From IMG/VR virus record IMGVR_UViG_3300013093_000017, positions 124,001 to 188,000 of that record: a DNA stretch of 64,000 nucleotides. One strand, written 5' to 3'. A program made the translations under genes and the position numbers. How positions within the stretch are numbered: position 1 is the first letter of the stretch; each line of letters starts with the position of its first letter. The notes under the pieces were generated by a model. That model saw only the letters and a program-made list of their open reading frames with translations, searched no databases and was not told the origin of the DNA. Positions 1 to 64,000 of this stretch are shown piece after piece.

Positions 1-978
1 TTATCCGAATTATTCCACCATAAAAAGAAACTAATAGAAGGCGGCAACGTATTTGCAGGCAAGACCACCTCTATTAAGCTCGAACACATTAAACCAACTT
101 TAGATGCGTACTTTGCAGAATTAAAACATCTGTTCCCAAAGAAAGCAGGCATATTTAACGAACAACATTTTGTTCCGCTCGGTTCAGTTGGTAAGAAAGC
201 AGTATCAGGTGACATTGATCTTGGTGTTAGTGCCAGTGAACTTGTTGATAAAGAAATGAGCGATGCCAGTATAGCCGAATGGGGTATTGATCCCAAAGAT
301 GTTGCAGCAGAAGCAGAAGCCTTGCAAAAACGTGCTAGAAGTTCTACTCCAGAACAATCACGCATGAAAGCATTTAATAAATGCCTAGTACGTTATATTA
401 ATGCACATGCCCCGACATTACACTGCGATGAAACAAAAGTAACCAACGGTAATCTATTTGGATTATTTCCGCAGATAGACGAACAAGGCAATCACGTGGG
501 CAGTGGTGTGCAAATTGATTGGATGATTGGAGATCTAAATTGGCTACGTTTCAGCTATCATTCAGCAGCATATCCAGAAGGGTCTAATGTTAAAGGTCTA
601 CACCGTACGCAATTAATGTTATCAGCGTTCCAAGTGGCAGGACTATCATTTAATCACGTTGATGGTGTTAAAGATAAAGCAACTGGAGAGATTATTGCTC
701 GGGATCCAGATCAAGCATTGACCATACTAGGACAACGTCTAGGATTTAAGATAACACAAGCAGATGCAGAAGATTATTATAAACTACATAATCTATTCAA
801 AGCAAAAATGCGCCCAGAAGAATATAGTGCATTGCTAAACATCTACTTTAAGATATTAGACAGTACTCGCGCAGATATTCCTGACGATTTACAAGACGAA
901 TGGCGCAAACGTCAATCGGCATTGGGCCTAACAGGTAAGTTCCTACCTGATAATTCAGCATTAAAGGTGAGACAATGA
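1..978 (+). CDS. Pol-beta-superfamily nucleotidyltransferase, 5'-truncated; probable head-packaged protein
   Basis: Frame 1 is open from base 1, upstream of the ORF-track start at 256: LSELFHHKKKLIEGGNVF...LGSVGKKAVSGDIDLG has the hGS...GDxD NTase motif; a candidate third Asp lies in VQIDWM. Confidence 0.65.
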   Translation, partial: LSELFHHKKKLIEGGNVFAGKTTSIKLEHIKPTLDAYFAELKHLFPKKAGIFNEQHFVPLGSVGKKAVSGDIDLGVSASELVDKEMSDASIAEWGIDPKDVAAEAEALQKRARSSTPEQSRMKAFNKCLVRYINAHAPTLHCDETKVTNGNLFGLFPQIDEQGNHVGSGVQIDWMIGDLNWLRFSYHSAAYPEGSNVKGLHRTQLMLSAFQVAGLSFNHVDGVKDKATGEIIARDPDQALTILGQRLGFKITQADAEDYYKLHNLFKAKMRPEEYSALLNIYFKILDSTRADIPDDLQDEWRKRQSALGLTGKFLPDNSALKVRQ

Positions 979-3926
979 GCGGAGTGGCCGGGGCAGATCG
1001 CATAAAGAGTCGTAACGATTTCAAGCAATTTCTTGCTTCCTATCAAAAACTGATTGCAAAGTTTCCTGGCTTTGTGTCAATGAACACCAGCGGAAGTTAT
1101 AACAGCGATCCAAGTAAAAATGATTTTGGTGATATTGATCTTATTGTACACATTAAGTCAGATAAAGATAAACCTACTGTAAAGAAAGAACTACAAGCGT
1201 TCTTACAAGCACAACCAGATACAGTTATTGTTCCGTTTACATCAGAGAAGCATGCCGGCAAACGTTCATACAATGCAGGTGAGCTAGTATCAGTTCGATA
1301 TCATGATGATCAATTAGGGTATTCGGCACAGATTGATAATATTGTTGCCCTAGACGAATCTGAAGCATCATTCAAGCAACAGTTCTTAGATTTGCCTGCT
1401 GAAAAGCAAGGACTAATTCTAGGCCTAGTTAAGATTGCTACAATTGAAACAGATCCTCAGAGGTTATTCAAAAGCCTGGGCATTACTGCACCGGTGCTTA
1501 CACAACCAAATGAAGAATACGAGTTTAATCTAAGCTCAGTTGAACTACAATTACGCAAGGTTACTTACAAACCAGGTACCTACGAACAAATTGGTCGCGA
1601 AGTTATTTGGACTAGTCGCAATTTTGACGATCTAAAGAAAGTATTATATCAATACAACCTAGATGCAGACTTTGATACACTGTTAGCACGTAGCAAACAG
1701 GTAATCAAAAATCCACGTAGCAATGCTCGTATGCAGGGTGTGTTTAGTAGTATGATTACAGTTAAATCAGGCGAGGTTGGCACTGCCAAAGGTGCCGGCA
1801 AAGAGGCTGCATTGGGCAAAATACAACAAACATTCCGCGAAGATGTATTCAAATGGACTGATTATGAAAATATAGACAACATGGATGATAGACTACATCT
1901 TGCCGAAACGTATTTTACAACTAATGATAATTTATTTGAATCCAATGAGTCCCATGCTACTAATTATTTCTTAAGTTTACGATCAGATGCTAATAATCCA
2001 GAAAAAAATAAAAAATATATTACAGTACTATTAGGATTAGTAGGTAATAGAATTATAAAAATGCAACCAATAGAATTTGGCACTTTTATAAAAAAACAAA
2101 ACGATATATTCTATATTCAATATGATAACGGTCAGATAGCAAAATTTCCGTCCGAATCAACTCAAACTAAATTAATAGCAAAAACATTTCTATTCGATAC
2201 TGTTCCTTCATATGATAAATTTAGGTCAGAAATTATGATGAAATTCAATACATCACTTCCTCCGGTTAATGAAAATCACAAGGACTACAGCTCAAAAATA
2301 AAAGAAAGCCGCTTGCTGAGAGAGATGATCAAACCACAGGCAAACACAGTGGTTTTTGCATTTGGTCGTTTTCAACCGCCTACAATTGGTCACGAGTTGC
2401 TCATTAATACAGTAAAGAACACCGCGGCAGGAAAGAGCGCAGATTACGTCATTTATGCTTCAAAAACACAAGATTCTAAGACAAATCCATTGTCAATTAA
2501 TCAAAAAATGCACTATTTAAACCTGGCATTTCCAGGTACTAACTTTGCTGCCGCTAATGCCGAAGTACGTACATTTATAGAGGCAGCAAAGATCCTTAAT
2601 AACCGATATAAGAATCTTATTATGGTAGCTGGTTCAGATCGTGTACAAGCATTTGAAGAAACACTAAACAAATACAATGGCACCGAATACAATTACGATA
2701 CAATCAAAGTAGTGTCAGCAGGTGAGCGTGATCCAGATTCAGATAGTGCAGCAGGTATGAGTGCAACTAAAATGCGCGAAGCCGCAGTAGCAGGTGATCT
2801 AAAACTGTTTATGAGTGGCCTCCCAAAAACTATCGGTACTAAGGATGCCGAACAGTTGATGAAAGATATACAACAAGGATTGGTTAAACAACCAAAGACT
2901 AATATGAAAGCAAAAGAAATTACTCCAGTGGCAGAAGGCAATGAAATGTCAGATGCAGCACAGGCTAGAGAATTGATCGGTCGTGCTATGTCCAATCGCA
3001 ATGAACGTCAAAAGTATTTTGACTTTATTAAATTCTTAATTAAAAAGAACGGCAAGGATTATGGTATTCAAGTACATCAACTTGCAACTAAGTTAGCCAA
3101 AGAAGGCCAAGATGGTATGGCAGGTGTAGGTATGGGCAACTATATTGTAGACAAAAGCACAACTAACGAACACATCGTTAAACACGGTAGTGGTTATAGA
3201 TTGGTTAGTAAAAAGACAGGTAAGAACTTAGGTGACTTTCCGACTCGTGCTGCCGCAGAAAAACACGAACGAGAAGTACAATACTTTAAACATGCCGGTG
3301 AAAGTGTAGAAACAGACGAAGCAGCAGCGTGGCAAAAATCGTCAGGTAAGAATAAGAACGGTGGCCTTAATAAAAAAGGAGTTGCCAGTTATCGCAGAGA
3401 ACATCCTGGTAGCAAACTAAAGACAGCAGTGACCAAAAAGCCTAGTGAATTAAAAGCAGGTAGTAAAGATGCTAAACGTCGCAAGAGTTTTTGCGCTCGT
3501 ATGAAAGGTATGAAGAAACATAACACTAGCTCTAAAACAGCACACGATCCAGATTCACGTATCAATAAATCACTGCGTAAATGGCACTGCGAAAGCATTG
3601 AAGAAATGGCACAGATGATTGAGAACGCAGAACGTTTCTTAGCCGAAGCCAAGGTCGAAGAAAAGTGGACTAAGAAATACAAAGACAGTATCAACTGTTC
3701 TAATCCTAAAGGCTTTAGTCAAAAGGCACATTGCGCAGGTAAAAAGAAAAACGAAGAAACAGAGATGGAAGAAGCTAAACAACGTTTAGATCCAAAGTGC
3801 TGGAAAGGTTATAAGAAACAAGGCACTAAGATGAAAGGCAACACTCGTGTAAACAACTGTGTGCCGGTAGACGAAAGCGTAGAAACTACTATAGCTAAAC
3901 TTATTAAACTATTAGAATCAAAATGA
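975..3926 (+). CDS. Multidomain protein: N-terminal Pol-beta NTase, AT-rich insert, cytidyltransferase-like (HIGH) domain and several small basic modules
   Basis: SGSY...FGDIDLIV (NTase); FAFGRFQPPTIGH, VAGSDR and GMSATKMR (T4-like phage cytidyltransferase family); C-terminal Lys-rich modules separated by Glu-rich linkers. Confidence 0.7.
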   Translation: MSGVAGADRIKSRNDFKQFLASYQKLIAKFPGFVSMNTSGSYNSDPSKNDFGDIDLIVHIKSDKDKPTVKKELQAFLQAQPDTVIVPFTSEKHAGKRSYNAGELVSVRYHDDQLGYSAQIDNIVALDESEASFKQQFLDLPAEKQGLILGLVKIATIETDPQRLFKSLGITAPVLTQPNEEYEFNLSSVELQLRKVTYKPGTYEQIGREVIWTSRNFDDLKKVLYQYNLDADFDTLLARSKQVIKNPRSNARMQGVFSSMITVKSGEVGTAKGAGKEAALGKIQQTFREDVFKWTDYENIDNMDDRLHLAETYFTTNDNLFESNESHATNYFLSLRSDANNPEKNKKYITVLLGLVGNRIIKMQPIEFGTFIKKQNDIFYIQYDNGQIAKFPSESTQTKLIAKTFLFDTVPSYDKFRSEIMMKFNTSLPPVNENHKDYSSKIKESRLLREMIKPQANTVVFAFGRFQPPTIGHELLINTVKNTAAGKSADYVIYASKTQDSKTNPLSINQKMHYLNLAFPGTNFAAANAEVRTFIEAAKILNNRYKNLIMVAGSDRVQAFEETLNKYNGTEYNYDTIKVVSAGERDPDSDSAAGMSATKMREAAVAGDLKLFMSGLPKTIGTKDAEQLMKDIQQGLVKQPKTNMKAKEITPVAEGNEMSDAAQARELIGRAMSNRNERQKYFDFIKFLIKKNGKDYGIQVHQLATKLAKEGQDGMAGVGMGNYIVDKSTTNEHIVKHGSGYRLVSKKTGKNLGDFPTRAAAEKHEREVQYFKHAGESVETDEAAAWQKSSGKNKNGGLNKKGVASYRREHPGSKLKTAVTKKPSELKAGSKDAKRRKSFCARMKGMKKHNTSSKTAHDPDSRINKSLRKWHCESIEEMAQMIENAERFLAEAKVEEKWTKKYKDSINCSNPKGFSQKAHCAGKKKNEETEMEEAKQRLDPKCWKGYKKQGTKMKGNTRVNNCVPVDESVETTIAKLIKLLESK

Positions 3927-4565: not shown

Positions 4566-5020
4566 AAATAAACGAAATCTTAGAAGCACAAGAACGTCCA
4601 TTGCCTAAAACTGATCTACGTGTAGGCGATCATGTTACAGCAGACACAAGCAAAGAACAATATCCAGGTGGTCATAAATCACGCACGGGCAAAGTAACCC
4701 GTGTTGGACAAACTGGTGTACACATTCAACCAGATGACGGTGGTGAGCGTGAATATCATCCTTACAAGATCGTAAAGAAAACTTCAGGGGTAGAAGAATC
4801 AGCAACAGCAGGTGCTACATCAAGCGGCTCTATTGCAACTGTGGTAAATCCGCAACTTAGTCCAGGTAAAGCACGCGGTAAGAAATCTTACACAGGCAGT
4901 CCAGGTCAAAGTGGTACTAAAGCACCACCGCAACCTAAACCGAAAGCACAAAAACCAACAGATAATGCATTGAATATGAAAGGTACTAGCATATTCGGTG
5001 GTCCAGCAATTAAACGATAA
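4562..5020 (+). CDS. Hypothetical protein with SH3/Tudor-like segment, probable internal head protein
   Basis: MKINEILE leader; LRVGDHV...TGKVTRVG beta-barrel-like segment; ESATAGATSSGSIA module. Confidence 0.55.
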   Translation: MKINEILEAQERPLPKTDLRVGDHVTADTSKEQYPGGHKSRTGKVTRVGQTGVHIQPDDGGEREYHPYKIVKKTSGVEESATAGATSSGSIATVVNPQLSPGKARGKKSYTGSPGQSGTKAPPQPKPKAQKPTDNALNMKGTSIFGGPAIKR

Positions 5021-5027
5021 CCCCCAA

Positions 5028-5068
5028 AAAGGTCAGATAACCTAAAAAATTATTTGACCTTTCCTTTT
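5028..5068 (+). terminator. Hairpin, probable terminator, overlapping the next promoter
   Basis: aaaggtcagataa (5028-5040) pairs with ttatttgaccttt (5050-5062), 13 bp with one G-U, followed by a pyrimidine tract. Confidence 0.5.
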
Positions 5069-5082
5069 CAACCCTATATACT
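5054..5082 (+). promoter_or_regulatory. sigma70-type promoter
   Basis: TTGACC-N17-TATACT upstream of an AAGGAG RBS and ATG 5106. Confidence 0.7.
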
Positions 5083-5105
5083 AGTATGACTAACAAGGAG
5101 ATATT

Positions 5106-5381
5106 ATGAGTAAAGCGTTTGGCGATCCAGAAAAAATTAAGATTAAACAAATTGTCTCAGAAGGTATGACTGTAATGCAAGAGATTGCTGACCTAACAGA
5201 AGGACTAAATGAAACCATTAAAGCAATTGCAGAAGAATTAGATGTAAAACCGAGTGTTATTAAGAAAGCAATTAAAATTGCACAAAAAGATCAATGGGAT
5301 CAAGTATTCCGTGAGTTTGATGATTTAGAAACAATCGTAGATATCAGTGGACACGCAAATCGTCTAACCGATTCCGAATAA
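5106..5381 (+). CDS. Small helical dsDNA-binding/transcription regulator (T4 DsbA/GapR-like)
   Basis: Size and helical pattern IKAIAEELDVKPSVIKKAIKIA; position ahead of the polymerase. Confidence 0.5.
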   Translation: MSKAFGDPEKIKIKQIVSEGMTVMQEIADLTEGLNETIKAIAEELDVKPSVIKKAIKIAQKDQWDQVFREFDDLETIVDISGHANRLTDSE

Positions 5382-5397
5382 CAATAAATAAAAACGA

Positions 5398-5460
5398 GAA
5401 AGGTTCCGCGAGCCATAAGTCGCATTTTGAAGGTCAGCCAGCCATAAGTGGTATTAGGAG
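5398..5460 (+). promoter_or_regulatory. Tandem RNA stem-loops in the DNA polymerase leader (candidate translational operator)
   Basis: GCGA-gccataag-TCGC (5408-5423) and GCCA-gccataag-TGGT (5437-5452), each preceded by AAGGT; the second abuts the AGGAG Shine-Dalgarno. Confidence 0.6.
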
Positions 5461-5466
5461 AAGTAA

Positions 5467-8139
5467 ATGTCGTATGTAGATTCCATCTGGGATCGTGACA
5501 ATGATATTGTCAAGGTCGTCGAACGAGATCCAATCAAGGGTCGTATATTCCAACAATTTCCAGCACGCTATGTGTTCTATTATCCAGACGGTCGAGGAAA
5601 ATACACATCAATCTTTGGGGAACCATTGACCAAGGTTGTTAGTAAGAGTTGGAAAGAAAATGTTAAAGAACAAAAGATTCATTCAAGTCACAAACTGTAC
5701 GAGAGCGATATCAATCCTGTATTCCGTTGTTTAGAAGAAAATTATCTAGGTAAAGATGCTCCAAAACTAAATGTAGCATTTTGGGATATTGAGGTGGACT
5801 TTGATCCAGAACGTGGCTATGCTAGTCCAGACGATGCGTTTATGCCAATTACTGCTATTGCAGTACACCTACAATGGTTAGACACTCTAGTGTGTTTAGC
5901 TGTACCTCCTAAAACATTAACTATGGCAGAAGCTCAGGAACAGGTTAAAGATTTTCCAAATACTATCCTATTCGAAACAGAATACGAAATGTTGGATACC
6001 TTCTTAAATTTAATTGAAGATGCAGATGTGTTAAGTGGATGGAACAGTGAAGGCTTTGATATGCCCTACACAGTTAATCGCATTATTAAAACTCTGAGCA
6101 AAGAAGATACTCGTAGATTATGTCTATTCGATCAACTGCCAAAAAAACGTGAATACGAAAAATATGGGAAACAGGCCGTTACTTATGATCTAGTTGGCCG
6201 TGTTCATTTAGATAGTTTAGAATTATATCGCAAGTACACTTACGAAGAACGTCACAGTTATTCGTTGGATGCTATTGCTGAATATGAACTAGGCGAACGC
6301 AAAACACAATACGAAGGCACACTTGATCAACTATACAACAATGACTTTAAAAAGTTTATTGAATATAACCGTCAAGATACTGCCTTGTTAGATCGCTTAG
6401 ATAAGAAATTAAAATTCTTAGACCTTGCTAACACACTAGCACATGATTGTACAGTATTGCTACAAACAACTATGGGTGCTGTGGCTGTTACAGAACAGGC
6501 TATTATTAACGAGGCACATCATTTAGGAATGATTGTTCCAAGTCGTCCTCGAAGAGATGATTCAGTTGACACGCAGGCCGCAGGTGCTTATGTAGCATAT
6601 CCAAAAAAAGGTATTCACGATTGGATTGGTTCAATGGATATTAACAGCTTATATCCAAGTGCAATTCGTGCCCTAAACATGGGTCCAGAAACTATTATTG
6701 GTCAATTACGTCAAGACTATACCAAAGCAGAAATCGAAGCCAAGATGGCTAAAAATGGCGGCAAGTTCGCTATGGCGTGGGAAGGTAAGTTTGGCGCAAA
6801 TGAATATGAGTTTGTTATGGCCAAAGATAAAACTAACGAAATCATTATTGATTGGGAAGATGGGCACACTGATGTAATGAGTGGTGCTCAGATCTATGAG
6901 CTAGTATTTGAAAGTAATCAACCTTGGATGCTATCAGCAAACGGAACTATCTTTACCTACGAGAAAGAAGGTATTATTCCGGGATTATTAAAACGCTGGT
7001 ATGCTGAACGTAAAGACATGCAGAAAAAACTAAAGGAAGCTATCGATGTTGGTAACAAAATTGAAGAAGAGTATTGGGATAAACGACAACTTGTTAAGAA
7101 AATTAATCTTAATAGTCTGTATGGGGCTATTCTTAACGCTGGTTGCCGCTTCTTTGATAACCGTATTGGACAATCCACCACCCTTACTGGGCGACGAATC
7201 GCTAGGCATATGGCCGCTAAGATAAATGAGATTATCACAGGCGATTACGACCATGTAGGTAAAAGCATTATCTACGGTGATACTGATAGTGCGTACTTTA
7301 GCGCATACTTAACTTTAAAGAATGAAATCAATAAAGGTCAACTTACTTGGAATAAAGATACTGTTATTGATCTATATAATACAGTAGCAGACGAAGTAAA
7401 TGGTACATTTCCTCAATTGATGCTAGATGATTTCCATTGTCCTAAATCCAGAGGCGAAGTAATTAAAGCAGGGCGTGAAATTGTTGCCATCAAAGGATTG
7501 TTTATTACCAAGAAGCGTTATGCTGTATTGTATTACGACAAAGACGGTAATCGTTATGACGTAGACGGCAAGGTTGGCAAGATCAAAGCTATGGGTTTAG
7601 ATTTGAAGCGCAGTGATACTCCGGAGTTTATGCAGAACTTTTTGAGCGATGTATTAACCAAGGTGTTAAATGGTGCTGAAGAATCAGAAATTCTTGAGAT
7701 GATATCAGAGTTCCGTACCAAGTTTAAAGTGCGTCCAGGCTGGGAAAAAGGTAGCCCAAAACGTGCTAACAACATTGCTGCCTATCAAGCCAAAGAAGAA
7801 AAGGCAGGTAAGAGTAATATGCCCGGACACGTTCGAGCTAGTATCAATTGGAATACTTTGAAGCGCATGAATGGTGACAAATATTCTATGAACATTGTAG
7901 ATGGTATGAAGGTTATCGTTTGCAAGATGAAAGACAATCCACTCGGATATACCTCAATCGCATATCCAGTAGATGAACTGCGTTTACCTAAATGGTTCCA
8001 AGAATTACCATTTGATCACGCAGAGATGGAAGCTACTATTATTAACAACAAACTAGATAATCTTATTGGAGTATTGGAGATTGACCTTGTGTCAACCCAA
8101 AACAACAATACATTTTCTTCGTTATTTGATTTTGAATAA
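5467..8139 (+). CDS. Family B DNA polymerase (T4 gp43-like)
   Basis: Exo motifs DIE, GWNSEGFD and YNRQD; polymerase motifs DINSLYPS, KINLNSLYG and YGDTDS. Confidence 0.97.
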   Translation: MSYVDSIWDRDNDIVKVVERDPIKGRIFQQFPARYVFYYPDGRGKYTSIFGEPLTKVVSKSWKENVKEQKIHSSHKLYESDINPVFRCLEENYLGKDAPKLNVAFWDIEVDFDPERGYASPDDAFMPITAIAVHLQWLDTLVCLAVPPKTLTMAEAQEQVKDFPNTILFETEYEMLDTFLNLIEDADVLSGWNSEGFDMPYTVNRIIKTLSKEDTRRLCLFDQLPKKREYEKYGKQAVTYDLVGRVHLDSLELYRKYTYEERHSYSLDAIAEYELGERKTQYEGTLDQLYNNDFKKFIEYNRQDTALLDRLDKKLKFLDLANTLAHDCTVLLQTTMGAVAVTEQAIINEAHHLGMIVPSRPRRDDSVDTQAAGAYVAYPKKGIHDWIGSMDINSLYPSAIRALNMGPETIIGQLRQDYTKAEIEAKMAKNGGKFAMAWEGKFGANEYEFVMAKDKTNEIIIDWEDGHTDVMSGAQIYELVFESNQPWMLSANGTIFTYEKEGIIPGLLKRWYAERKDMQKKLKEAIDVGNKIEEEYWDKRQLVKKINLNSLYGAILNAGCRFFDNRIGQSTTLTGRRIARHMAAKINEIITGDYDHVGKSIIYGDTDSAYFSAYLTLKNEINKGQLTWNKDTVIDLYNTVADEVNGTFPQLMLDDFHCPKSRGEVIKAGREIVAIKGLFITKKRYAVLYYDKDGNRYDVDGKVGKIKAMGLDLKRSDTPEFMQNFLSDVLTKVLNGAEESEILEMISEFRTKFKVRPGWEKGSPKRANNIAAYQAKEEKAGKSNMPGHVRASINWNTLKRMNGDKYSMNIVDGMKVIVCKMKDNPLGYTSIAYPVDELRLPKWFQELPFDHAEMEATIINNKLDNLIGVLEIDLVSTQNNNTFSSLFDFE

Positions 8140-8186: not shown

Positions 8187-9077
8187 ATGAACTACAAACT
8201 ACATTATGAATTATTGATTAAAAAAGCAAAGAATCGTATACTCGATCCGCTGATTAAAGTGGAATCTCATCATATTTTACCAAGATCAATGGGTGGCACC
8301 GATATGAACGAAAATCTAATAGCGTTGTTTCCGAGAGAACATTTAATTGCGCATTTATTGTTATGGAAAATTCATCAATCTAATGCAATGACTAATGCGG
8401 CGTGGCAAATGTCACATAGGAAAATTGGAGATGAATATATTAAAATTAACTCTCGTATATATGAAAAATTAAGAATAGCCTTTAGTGAAACACAAACCAA
8501 AAGAATGGCAGACCCTAAAGTAAGAGAACACTTAAAAAATATTAATTTAGGGCATCCCGTAAGTATCGAAAGCAGACAAAAAATATCTGCCGCACTTACA
8601 GGAAAGAAACAACCAAACGAGTTAGTAGAAAAAAGATCTATAGGTATTAGAAAATATATGTCAGAATCACGTAAAGGAAAAACCTGGGAAGAAATATACG
8701 GTAAAAAAGTTTCTAAAAAAATGAGAGAAGATATCAGTAATGCTAATAAAGGAAAAATACTCACCGATTCCCACAAAGAAAATATTAGCAAAGGAAATAC
8801 TGGTAAGCTGTTATCCGAAGAAACGAAAGAAAAAATATCAACATCTAACAAAGGAAAGGTTAGAACCGAGGAGGCAAAAAAACGAATATCAGAATCCCAT
8901 ATAGGAAAACTATTATCAGAGGAACATAAAACAAAAATAAGTGAATCAAATAAAGGAAAACCTAAATCAGAAGAGACTAAACAAAAAATGTCAGAATCTA
9001 AAAAAGGAAAAACGTTCACTGAAGACCATAAGAAAAAACTTAGTGAAGCAGCAAAACAAAGAAAAAAGAGATTTTGA
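8187..9077 (+). mobile_element. Free-standing HNH homing endonuclease with NUMOD3-like repeats
   Basis: [12 protein letters not shown]...[14 protein letters not shown]; repeated SEETKxKIS...KGK units; very A-rich; own CTAAATA at 8163-8169. Confidence 0.9.
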
Positions 9078-63333: not shown

Positions 63334-64000
63334 ATGACAATAACAATAACACCAACTGGCCGCAAAGTAAAATATCTTAATAATAGAGACTTACTAGCAG
63401 AAATACATAAAAGTAAATGTACATACAGTAGTTTTACACTTCCGGAATACAAGCAACACGACATTATTCTAACAAATCTTGATAAAATCAATATCAGGAC
63501 TATCGCAGATGCCAAACGAGCCCGTGCTAAACGCATGGGGTTAGAAGCATTTATGAATGCCCGCATTGCAGGTGATAAGAAAATCAAATTAGGAGAGTGT
63601 ACGCCAGACTATACCACTATTCCTAAGACAGATATTGTTATCCGCATCATGACATTCGATCATATTCCGCTCTCTCCGGGCAGAAAAAAAACAACCAAAA
63701 CAGTAGCAGACGCACACGAAAAAGTTAATTTTCCTCCATTCCAACATTGGAAGTTTAACGAGAACGATGAACTCATTTGTGTGGCAAAAAGCCATTGGAA
63801 AGGCCCTGTAGATACAGGATACTTTAGTAAAGACCATGGTCGTATTACAGAAAATCTAGGCAAGATGTATATTAAACTGTCAGAGCGTTACGCACAGCGT
63901 AGTAACTGGCGTGGCTACACCTACATTGATGAAATGAAGGGACAGGCTATTCTACAATTAAGTCAAATTGGTCTACAGTTTGATGAGTCGAAATCAGAAA
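63334..64000 (+). CDS. Late-transcription sigma factor (T4 gp55-like), 3'-truncated; not in ORF track
   Basis: Manual translation: MTITITPTGRKVKYLNNRDLLAEI...LGKMYIKLSERYAQRSNWRGYTYIDEMKGQAILQL...FDESKSE. YLNN and NWRGYTY.DEM match gp55-type motifs. Confidence 0.8.
   Translation, partial: MTITITPTGRKVKYLNNRDLLAEIHKSKCTYSSFTLPEYKQHDIILTNLDKINIRTIADAKRARAKRMGLEAFMNARIAGDKKIKLGECTPDYTTIPKTDIVIRIMTFDHIPLSPGRKKTTKTVADAHEKVNFPPFQHWKFNENDELICVAKSHWKGPVDTGYFSKDHGRITENLGKMYIKLSERYAQRSNWRGYTYIDEMKGQAILQLSQIGLQFDESKSE

What the first reader, a model, noticed from the sequence alone, without database searches (positions are those of the whole stretch)
5398..5466. Tandem covarying hairpins with an identical 8-nt loop in the DNA polymerase leader
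Seen: two units with a 29-nt period, AAGGT..-GCGA[GCCATAAG]TCGC-ATT and AAGGT..-GCCA[GCCATAAG]TGGT-ATT. The loops are identical while the stems change compensatorily (G-C to C-G, G-C to G-U). The second unit ends 3 nt before the AGGAG SD. The upstream GGU could pair with the loop GCC to form a small pseudoknot. Known: T4 gp43 represses its own translation through a hairpin with an 8-nt loop next to the SD. Inference: a duplicated, probably undescribed cis-regulatory RNA, either a polymerase autoregulatory operator or a small-ligand sensor.
Basis: partly seen in the sequence, partly recalled or inferred. Interest (0 to 1): 0.7.

Follow-up and report, generated by a model that had tools for sequence, protein, structure and literature searches.

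The report
Tandem pseudoknot leader of phage polymerase
The untranslated leader of the DNA polymerase gene of a very abundant group of uncultured freshwater giant phages carries two conserved mini-pseudoknot RNA hairpins next to the ribosome binding site: an undescribed regulatory RNA that probably lets a protein, perhaps the polymerase itself, shut off polymerase translation.

Summary
Window 5402-5452 has two units, each GGU, 2-3 nt, a 4-bp stem, the 8-nt loop GCCAUAAG, and the returning stem. The second unit ends 3 nt before AGGAG and the polB start (5467).

Single-sequence folding is not significant, but comparison is decisive:
- All 217 related IMG/VR loci (polB 77-94% aa identical) carry both units; 114 leaders are distinct.
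- Stems covary heavily: 95.8% of cells paired against 21-44% for slid controls, with 10 and 15 distinct inner stems.
- The loop consensus is GCC-NN-AA-D.
- The upstream GGU always matches the loop GCC. Variants keep pairing (GGC/GCC, GGU/ACC, and AGU with GCU in 6 of 6), so each unit is an H-type mini-pseudoknot.
- G-U pairs place the structure on the sense RNA.

The element occurs only in the polB leader of each genome. It stays with polB while the upstream gene varies. It matches no Rfam family and is absent from cultured phages and from polB relatives at 59% identity or less.

Best reading: a new tandem-pseudoknot translational operator of polB, working like the T4/RB69 gp43 operator. The binding protein is not tested. 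Rivals are a structure-only mRNA stabiliser or enhancer, another RNA-binding protein, and a riboswitch.

The parts
5385..5390 (+). TAAATA box, a T4-late-promoter-like -10 element. Its last A lies 11 nt before GGU(1), which predicts a transcript start about 5 nt before the first pseudoknot.
   Evidence: The box is conserved at fixed spacing in relatives whatever gene lies upstream. TAAATA is about 7-fold enriched in the 80 nt upstream of gene starts in this genome. A gp55-like late sigma factor is encoded. The promoter role is inferred; no 5' end data exist.
5396..5401 (+). Conserved purine-rich 5' flank GAGAAA, the likely 5' end of the leader.
   Evidence: Position weight table anchored on GGU(1): G56 A57 G48 A43 A65 A54 of 65 sequences. 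TAAATA-N(4-6)-GAG occurs only 4 times in the genome, so this flank is not a general promoter feature.
5402..5404 (+). GGU(1), the 5' strand of pseudoknot helix 1. It pairs with loop bases 5412-5414.
   Evidence: Triplet/loop states in 114 distinct leaders: GGT/GCC 93, GGC/GCC 12, AGT/GCT 6, GGT/ACC 3, none unpaired. Tool count on A1: columns 11-13 with 21-23.
5408..5423 (+). Hairpin 1: stem GCGA/UCGC (5408-5411 with 5420-5423) and the 8-nt loop GCCAUAAG (5412-5419).
   Evidence: Every stem pair has changes on both sides, and there are 10 distinct inner stems. Loop consensus is GCC-NN-AA-D.
5432..5434 (+). GGU(2), the 5' strand of pseudoknot helix 2. It pairs with loop bases 5441-5443.
   Evidence: GGT/GCC 109, GGC/GCC 3, GGT/ACC 2, none unpaired. 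All changes are one-sided but keep pairing.
5437..5452 (+). Hairpin 2: stem GCCA/UGGU (5437-5440 with 5449-5452, outer pair G-U) and the 8-nt loop GCCAUAAG (5441-5448).
   Evidence: There are 15 distinct inner stems, and 4 of 5 pairs have changes on both sides. G-U appears at the outer pair in 16 of 66 sequences, which fits only the + strand RNA.
5456..5460 (+). Shine-Dalgarno AGGAG, 3 nt after hairpin 2 and 6 nt before the ATG.
   Evidence: In 112 of 114 distinct leaders the SD core starts 0-4 nt after the inner stem of hairpin 2. In 45 of 114 the extended stem covers 1-3 SD bases.
5467..8139 (+). polB, a family B DNA polymerase (T4 gp43 homologue, 890 aa). This is the gene the leader controls.
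   Evidence: Pfam DNA_pol_B and DNA_pol_B_exo1. 26% identity to T4 gp43, E 3e-54. tblastn to phage DNA polymerases.

Best explanation
The 5' leader of the polB mRNA folds into two tandem H-type mini-pseudoknots. Each has a 3-bp helix GGU/GCC, a 1-3 nt spacer, a 4-7 bp stem, and a five-base strand NNAAD that can lie in the groove of the 3-bp helix. The second pseudoknot abuts the Shine-Dalgarno sequence.

The element most likely acts as a translational operator. A protein that recognises the conserved GG(U), GCC and AA bases binds one or both units and blocks the 30S subunit at the adjacent SD. The most economical candidate is the DNA polymerase itself, as in T4 and RB69 gp43 autoregulation. 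That would tie polymerase synthesis to the amount of polymerase not engaged on DNA.

Shown: the structure, the pseudoknot, the strand, the position next to the SD, and the exclusive linkage to polB. Inferred: that it regulates translation, that a protein binds it, and that the protein is polB.
For: - Structure: 95.8% of cells are paired against 21-44% when partners are slid, and 10 of 13 pairs have changes on both sides. RNAalifold finds the same two hairpins independently.
- Pseudoknot: all 228 units in 114 distinct leaders have a complementary triplet. All 26 variant units keep pairing, including AGU with GCU in 6 of 6. That state needs 5 changes on a quick polB tree.
- Cis pairing: in the AGU/GCU leaders unit 2 stays GGU/GCC, so each triplet pairs with its own loop.
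- RNA on the sense strand: 53 G-U pairs in the stems, and U-G is the commonest third pair of the pseudoknot.
- Gene specificity: the tandem model R1 and the single-unit model R2 hit only the polB leader in the 230-kb genome and in ten relatives of 87-327 kb.
- Linkage: the upstream gene differs among relatives (membrane protein, DsbA-like, oxygenase-like, others), yet the element stays attached to polB. Where a small ORF is inserted, its stop abuts or overlaps the polB ATG.
- Position: the SD starts 0-4 nt after hairpin 2 in 112 of 114 leaders but is mostly not sequestered by the fold. This suits steric blocking by a bound factor.
- Precedent: the T4 gene 43 leader has a 5-bp stem and 8-nt loop 7 nt before its SD. 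gp43 represses its own translation there, and AA/AC bases in the 3' half of the loop matter for binding (PMC3014915).
- No RegA homologue was found in the 230 kb held.
Against: No binding or expression data exist, and no RNA sequencing run was listed.

The conserved bases could all be explained by RNA tertiary structure alone (G-C rich 3-bp helix plus A-minor contacts), with no protein needed.

The review notes that some T4-related polymerases do not autoregulate (PMC3014915). This polB is only 26% identical to T4 gp43. The loop sequence and the pseudoknot differ from the T4 operator, so homology of the mechanism cannot be assumed.

The genome record is only 65% complete, so another regulator or another copy of the element could lie in the missing part.
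Confidence: 0.5

Rival explanations
1. A structure-only element with no dedicated trans factor. The two compact pseudoknots at the extreme 5' end of the transcript protect the polB mRNA from 5'-end-dependent decay, or act as a ribosome standby or enhancer platform beside the SD.
For: The predicted transcript start lies about 5 nt before pseudoknot 1 (conserved TAAATA at fixed spacing). The SD is left mostly free by the conserved fold. Every conserved base can be explained by pseudoknot formation itself.
Against: The triplet identity and orientation (GG 5', CC in the loop) are fixed in 228 of 228 units, while the neighbouring stems change freely. That points to recognition of the bases and not only to stability. 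A generic stabiliser would be expected at other highly expressed genes, but the unit is found nowhere else. Two identical units beside the SD is the layout of an operator.
Confidence: 0.2
2. An operator for a different RNA-binding protein of the phage or host (not polB) that controls polymerase translation. Two units would fit a dimer.
For: The structural and positional evidence is the same as for the best explanation. The two near-identical units suit a dimeric binder. T4 polymerase is known to bind a single hairpin (PMC3014915).
Against: Dedicated regulators usually have several targets, such as RegA in T4. Here only one site per genome was found, and no RegA homologue was found. No candidate gene is consistently adjacent, because the upstream neighbour varies.
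Confidence: 0.15
3. A tandem riboswitch. Each mini-pseudoknot binds a small ligand, for example a nucleotide or dNTP-related compound, and ligand-dependent folding changes access to the SD.
For: The layout resembles guanidine-II (mini-ykkC): tandem small hairpins with identical conserved loops, free stems and a variable linker just before an SD. Small H-type pseudoknots such as preQ1-I do bind ligands. These are resemblances from established knowledge, not tests.
Against: No Rfam riboswitch family matches, even at E up to 10. The element occurs before one gene only, a polymerase, and not before metabolic or transport genes. There are no nucleotides between the stem and the GCC strand, and two of the five loop-crossing bases vary freely, which leaves little for a pocket. 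The SD is not part of a conserved alternative pairing.
Confidence: 0.08
4. A DNA-level element: direct repeats bound by a transcription or replication protein, or a chance local duplication.
For: The two copies lie about 29-30 bp apart, close to three helical turns, just downstream of a promoter-like box.
Against: What is conserved is complementarity and not sequence: 10 and 15 different inner stems. G-U pairs would be A-C mismatches on the other strand. The pseudoknot covariation has no DNA-level meaning. Presence in all 217 loci excludes chance.
Confidence: 0.02

Closest known systems
T4 / RB69 gene 43 (DNA polymerase) translational operator
   Same: Both lie in the 5' leader of the phage family B polymerase gene. 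Both have a short stem (4-7 bp here, 5 bp in T4) with an 8-nt loop a few nt upstream of the SD. Both have an AA dinucleotide in the 3' half of the loop, which is important for binding in T4, RB69 and RB49 (PMC3014915). Each occurs once per genome.
   Different: This element has two units and T4 has one. Each unit here is a pseudoknot with an upstream GGU, whereas the review states there is no evidence of a pseudoknot for gene 43. The loop is GCC-NN-AA-D here and AAUAACUC in T4. There is no detectable sequence homology. The polymerases are only 26% identical. Binding is not tested here.
T4 gene 32 autoregulatory 5' pseudoknot and the E. coli rpsO (S15) operator pseudoknot
   Same: All are H-type pseudoknots in the leader of an autoregulated gene for a nucleic-acid-binding protein, and all are used to control translation initiation (PMC3014915).
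   Different: The genes and proteins differ. Those are single, larger pseudoknots. The gene 32 pseudoknot nucleates cooperative binding on an unstructured A/U-rich tract, which is absent here.
Guanidine-II (mini-ykkC) riboswitch
   Same: Both have two tandem small hairpins with identical conserved loops, freely covarying stems and a variable linker, placed immediately before the SD (from established knowledge).
   Different: Its loops are ACGR tetraloops that kiss each other. Here the loops are 8 nt and each pairs with its own upstream GGU. There is no Rfam match, and the gene context is a polymerase and not a transporter or carboxylase.
preQ1-I riboswitch and other minimal H-type pseudoknots
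   Same: Size is similar, about 25-30 nt per unit. The topology is H-type, with an A-containing strand crossing a short helix.
   Different: In preQ1-I the 3' tail pairs with the loop, and junction bases form the ligand pocket. Here the 5' flank pairs with the first three loop bases, with no junction bases. There is no Rfam match.

Membership tests
T4/RB69 gp43 translational operator | Lies in the polB (gene 43) leader, adjacent to or overlapping the SD | tested here: met
   Hairpin 2 ends 3 nt before AGGAG in the window and 0-4 nt before the SD core in 112 of 114 leaders.
T4/RB69 gp43 translational operator | Short hairpin (about 5 bp) with an 8-nt loop | tested here: met
   Both units have 4-7 bp stems and 8-nt loops (rarely 9). 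The T4 hairpin was read for comparison.
T4/RB69 gp43 translational operator | Loop sequence of the T4 type (-UAAC-/-UAAA-) and sequence homology to the T4/RB69 operator | tested here: not met
   The loop is GCC-NN-AA-D, and only the AA is shared. The leader finds nothing significant in cultured phages. The models built here do not hit distant relatives' leaders.
T4/RB69 gp43 translational operator | Single hairpin without a pseudoknot | tested here: not met
   There are two units, each with a covariation-supported GGU/GCC pseudoknot. The review reports no pseudoknot for gene 43 (PMC3014915).
T4/RB69 gp43 translational operator | Specific binding by the polymerase and repression of its own translation | not testable with these tools
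   The complex-prediction job with polB and the RNA was not folded and gives no evidence. No RNA runs were listed.
Any Rfam 15 family (including riboswitches preQ1-I/II/III, guanidine-II, and phage RNA motifs) | Covariance-model match | tested here: not met
   There were 0 matches at gathering scores in the whole window. At E up to 10 in 5300-5560, the only match is an irrelevant lncRNA hit outside the element.
Guanidine-II (mini-ykkC) riboswitch | ACGR tetraloops on both hairpins | tested here: not met
   The loops are 8 nt, GCC-NN-AA-D.
Intrinsic terminator / attenuator | G+C-rich stem followed by a U tract | tested here: not met
   No terminator-like site was found in 4900-5700. The sequence after the hairpins is not a conserved U tract.

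The most novel reading that the evidence does not exclude
The two mini-pseudoknots are tandem aptamers of a new riboswitch class. It would let a phage set DNA polymerase synthesis by a small molecule, for example a nucleotide or dNTP-pool signal, and would be the first riboswitch known to control a replicative polymerase.
Probability: 0.07. Interest if true: 0.9.

Novelty: new variant of a known kind. Interest (0 to 1): 0.62.

Why it matters
Translational autoregulation of a replicative DNA polymerase through an RNA operator is known essentially from T4 and its close relatives. There is still no structure of the complex and little idea of how widespread the mechanism is.

This element is a second, structurally different and far better constrained candidate operator. 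It has two pseudoknots of about 25 nt each, defined at nearly single-base resolution by natural variation. It occurs in a phage group so common in lakes that the search's 8000-candidate limit was filled, every candidate scoring E <= 1e-50, with the best 120 at 83-100% identity.

It offers a compact, testable RNA-protein or RNA-ligand system. It is a new family for Rfam-type annotation and a marker for this uncultured clade. It is also a natural example of tandem minimal H-type pseudoknots. If the binder is polB, it would show that polymerase autoregulation has been kept or re-invented with a different RNA solution.

Tried and rejected
- Single-sequence folding gave energies no better than shuffles, and the MFE of the full leader is another fold. 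It is not useful evidence either way.
- Rfam gave nothing at gathering scores or at E up to 10.
- The leader was searched in cultured phages by blastn. The leaders of Phosso, Atu_ph07, Vibrio 2.275.O, SCTP-2, CBB, 121Q and RaK2 were read and searched with model R1. The motif is in none of them; Rak2-like leaders carry a terminator hairpin.
- polB relatives at 52-59% identity from the representative search have no motif.
- RNA sequencing runs: none was listed. Only lake and freshwater DNA metagenomes hold the sequence, so no 5' ends could be mapped.
- Complex prediction with polB plus the leader RNA was not folded by the tool. It is no evidence for or against binding.
- RegA homologue: none in the 230 kb held. 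The record is 65% complete.
- A regex scan for further single units in the genome found only relaxed-loop hits near the number expected by chance. The best-looking one, at G000:32109, lies inside an ORF. It was rejected as chance, and model R2 confirmed this.
- The idea of a stop-codon readthrough or frameshift stimulator for the upstream gene arose because many relatives have a stop 4-5 nt before GGU(1). It was rejected: the upstream genes are unrelated, the window's stop is 20 nt away, and linker lengths vary.
- A terminator or attenuator was rejected because there is no U tract and the scan found no site.

Full report
**What is there.** The window is part of a 229,675-base IMG/VR virus record (about 65% complete, 38.6% G+C), a giant phage from lake water.

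ORF 5467-8139 is a family B DNA polymerase. It is 26% identical to T4 gp43. Its closest cultured relatives are only 42-50% identical: Sinorhizobium phage Phosso, Atu_ph07 and the Rak2-like phages. The gene upstream (5106-5381) is DsbA-like.

The 85-nt intergenic leader reads: stop 5379-5381, TAAATA 5385-5390, GAGAAA 5396-5401, then two units.
- Unit 1: GGU 5402-5404, UCC, GCGA, loop GCCAUAAG 5412-5419, UCGC.
- An 8-nt linker follows.
- Unit 2: GGU 5432-5434, CA, GCCA, loop GCCAUAAG 5441-5448, UGGU.
- Then AUU, AGGAG 5456-5460, and AUG at 5467.

The only amendment is that the loops are 29 nt apart while the AAGGU words are 30 nt apart.

**Is it more than chance?** Within the window, the unit pattern occurs twice against 0.10 expected. 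The decamer AGCCATAAGT occurs three times in 230 kb, two of them here. Thermodynamics alone says nothing: z-scores are -0.3 to -1.0, and the MFE of the whole leader is a different fold.

**Comparative evidence.** Three scans of IMG/VR with polB proteins returned 217 loci whose polB is 77-94% identical to the window's.
- All 217 carry both units, and 114 leaders are distinct.
- On a MAFFT alignment of 66 distinct leaders, 95.8% of cells form standard pairs, against 21-44% when partners are slid by 1-3 columns. Ten of 13 pairs show changes on both sides, and no shuffle reached the observed covariation score.
- RNAalifold predicts the same two hairpins without guidance.
- The inner four base pairs take 10 different forms in hairpin 1 and 15 in hairpin 2.
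- The loop is GCC-NN-AA-D. The two N positions are free, and the AA is nearly invariant.

**The pseudoknot.** In every one of the 228 units, a triplet 5-9 nt upstream of the loop is complementary to the first three loop bases.
- Unit 1: GGU/GCC 93, GGC/GCC 12, AGU/GCU 6, GGU/ACC 3.
- Unit 2: GGU/GCC 109, GGC/GCC 3, GGU/ACC 2.
- No variant breaks pairing.
- The G-C to A-U double change is perfectly linked: 6 of 6 GCU loops have AGU, and none of the GCC or ACC loops does.
- On a quick polB tree that state needs five changes. The tree is a FastTree of a star-like radiation, and leader recombination is possible, so I treat the number of independent events as uncertain.
- In those six leaders unit 2 remains GGU/GCC, so each triplet pairs with its own loop and not with the other unit's.

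The topology is a classical H-type pseudoknot. In order, it has the 5' strand of a 3-bp helix, a 1-3 nt spacer, the 5' arm of a 4-7 bp stem, the 3' strand of the 3-bp helix with no junction bases, a five-base crossing strand NNAAD, and the 3' arm of the stem. That the conserved AA makes minor-groove contacts with the G-C pairs is an inference from known pseudoknot structures.

**Strand and molecule.** There are 53 G-U pairs in the stems. U-G is the commonest third pair of the pseudoknot. On the other strand these would be A-C mismatches. What is conserved is complementarity and not sequence. The element therefore acts as sense-strand RNA and not as a DNA site.

**Context.**
- Copy number: model R1 (both units) and model R2 (one unit) find only the polB leader, in the 230-kb genome and in ten relatives of 87-327 kb. 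A looser regex scan gave only chance-level hits.
- Upstream gene: it is unrelated from one relative to the next. It may be a 99-aa membrane protein, a DsbA-like protein, an oxygenase-like protein or another gene, yet the element always stays with polB.
- Inserted ORFs: in three loci a 45-50 aa Cys-rich ORF, and in one an 11-codon ORF, lies between the element and polB. In the three where I read the junction, the inserted ORF's stop abuts or overlaps the polB ATG. The element therefore still heads the translational unit.
- SD position: the SD core begins 0-4 nt after hairpin 2 in 112 of 114 leaders. It is partly (1-3 nt) covered by an extended stem in 45 of them. The conserved fold does not by itself hide the SD.
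- Promoter: a TAAATA box sits at fixed spacing, with its last A about 11 nt before GGU(1), whatever lies upstream. TAAATA is about 7-fold enriched upstream of gene starts in this genome. A gp55-like late sigma factor is encoded. The leader probably starts about 5 nt before pseudoknot 1; this is inferred.
- A sigma-70-like site lies only before the DsbA-like gene, and no terminator is predicted.

**Phyletic range.** The element is absent from polB relatives at 52-59% identity. It is also absent from the cultured giant phages examined. The clade that has it is very large.

**Mechanism.** The best-supported reading is a translational operator. It is a gene-specific, sequence-constrained, duplicated RNA structure placed directly against a free SD, which is the layout expected for steric repression by a bound factor. 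The known precedent is in the homologous gene. The T4 gene 43 leader, read here, has a 5-bp stem with the 8-nt loop AAUAACUC 7 nt before its SD. gp43 binds that hairpin and the RBS region to repress its own translation. AA/AC bases in the 3' half of the loop are important, no pseudoknot is known there, and some T4 relatives do not autoregulate (PMC3014915).

I therefore say that the element works like the gp43 operator, with a confidence of about 0.5. I do not file it as a member of that family, for four reasons:
- Sequence homology and the T4 loop type were tested and not met.
- The element is doubled.
- Each unit is pseudoknotted.
- Binding could not be tested; the complex tool did not fold the job.

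**Rivals.**
- A structure-only 5' stabiliser or enhancer (0.2). It fits the 5'-terminal position. It does not fit the fixed base identity of the triplets or the restriction to one gene.
- Another RNA-binding protein (0.15).
- A tandem riboswitch (0.08). The layout recalls guanidine-II and minimal pseudoknot aptamers. There is no Rfam match, only a single non-metabolic gene context, and no junction bases for a pocket.
- A DNA-level site or chance (0.02).

**Novelty.** I found no description of this element. Rfam 15 has no match, and the literature searches run turned up nothing similar. It is best classed as a new variant of a known kind: a phage polymerase leader operator or cis-regulatory pseudoknot. 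It has unusually clean comparative support and a very wide environmental distribution.

Noticed in passing
window 5385-5390 and genome-wide; gp55-like gene at G000:C1:187784-188071 (window about 63784-64000, running off the end): TAAATA, the core of the T4 late promoter TATAAATA, is rare in the genome (189 copies on both strands). Yet 38 of 160 predicted gene starts have it in the 80 nt upstream, against about 2.8% of sequence space. A gp55-like late sigma factor is encoded (E 5e-7 to T4 gp55). This suggests T4-late-type promoters, including one dedicated to polB.
   Followed up: partly
L106, L108 (locus 267-404) and L110 (252-404); L109 (369-404): In a few relatives a small ORF sits between the leader element and polB. 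It is a Cys-rich 45-50 aa ORF (CxxC...CxxxC, zinc-ribbon-like) in three loci and an 11-codon ORF in one. In L106, L110 and L109 its stop abuts or overlaps the polB ATG, which suggests translational coupling.
   Followed up: partly
upstream of polB in L004-L083 (compare window 5106-5381): The slot immediately upstream of the polB leader is hypervariable among close relatives. It holds a conserved 99-aa membrane protein in many, DsbA-like genes in the window, L060 and L020, 2OG-oxygenase-like genes in L013, L030, L032 and L066, and unrelated ORFs elsewhere.
   Followed up: partly
window 8187-9077 (+): An HNH/NUMOD3 homing-endonuclease-like ORF (296 aa) lies directly downstream of polB.
   Followed up: no
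window 975-3926 (+): A 983-aa ORF carries DUF6321 and a weak cytidylyltransferase-like match. Its function is unknown.
   Followed up: no
window 5054-5082 (+): This is the only sigma-70-like promoter match in 4900-5700 (TTGACC-17-TATACT), just upstream of the DsbA-like gene. polB could therefore also be co-transcribed with it.
   Followed up: no
L096-L098 (CBB, 121Q, RaK2), about 40-80 nt upstream of polB: Rak2-like phages have a G+C-rich hairpin followed by a T tract (terminator-like) in the polB leader, where this clade has the tandem pseudoknots.
   Followed up: no
L099 3930-3955 (-), T4 gene 43 leader: In T4, GAGU upstream of the operator hairpin is complementary to ACUC at the 3' end of the 8-nt loop (seen by eye). 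The geometry is unfavourable because there would be no crossing strand, and the GAGU lies in a TATAAT-like region. This is probably meaningless.
   Followed up: no
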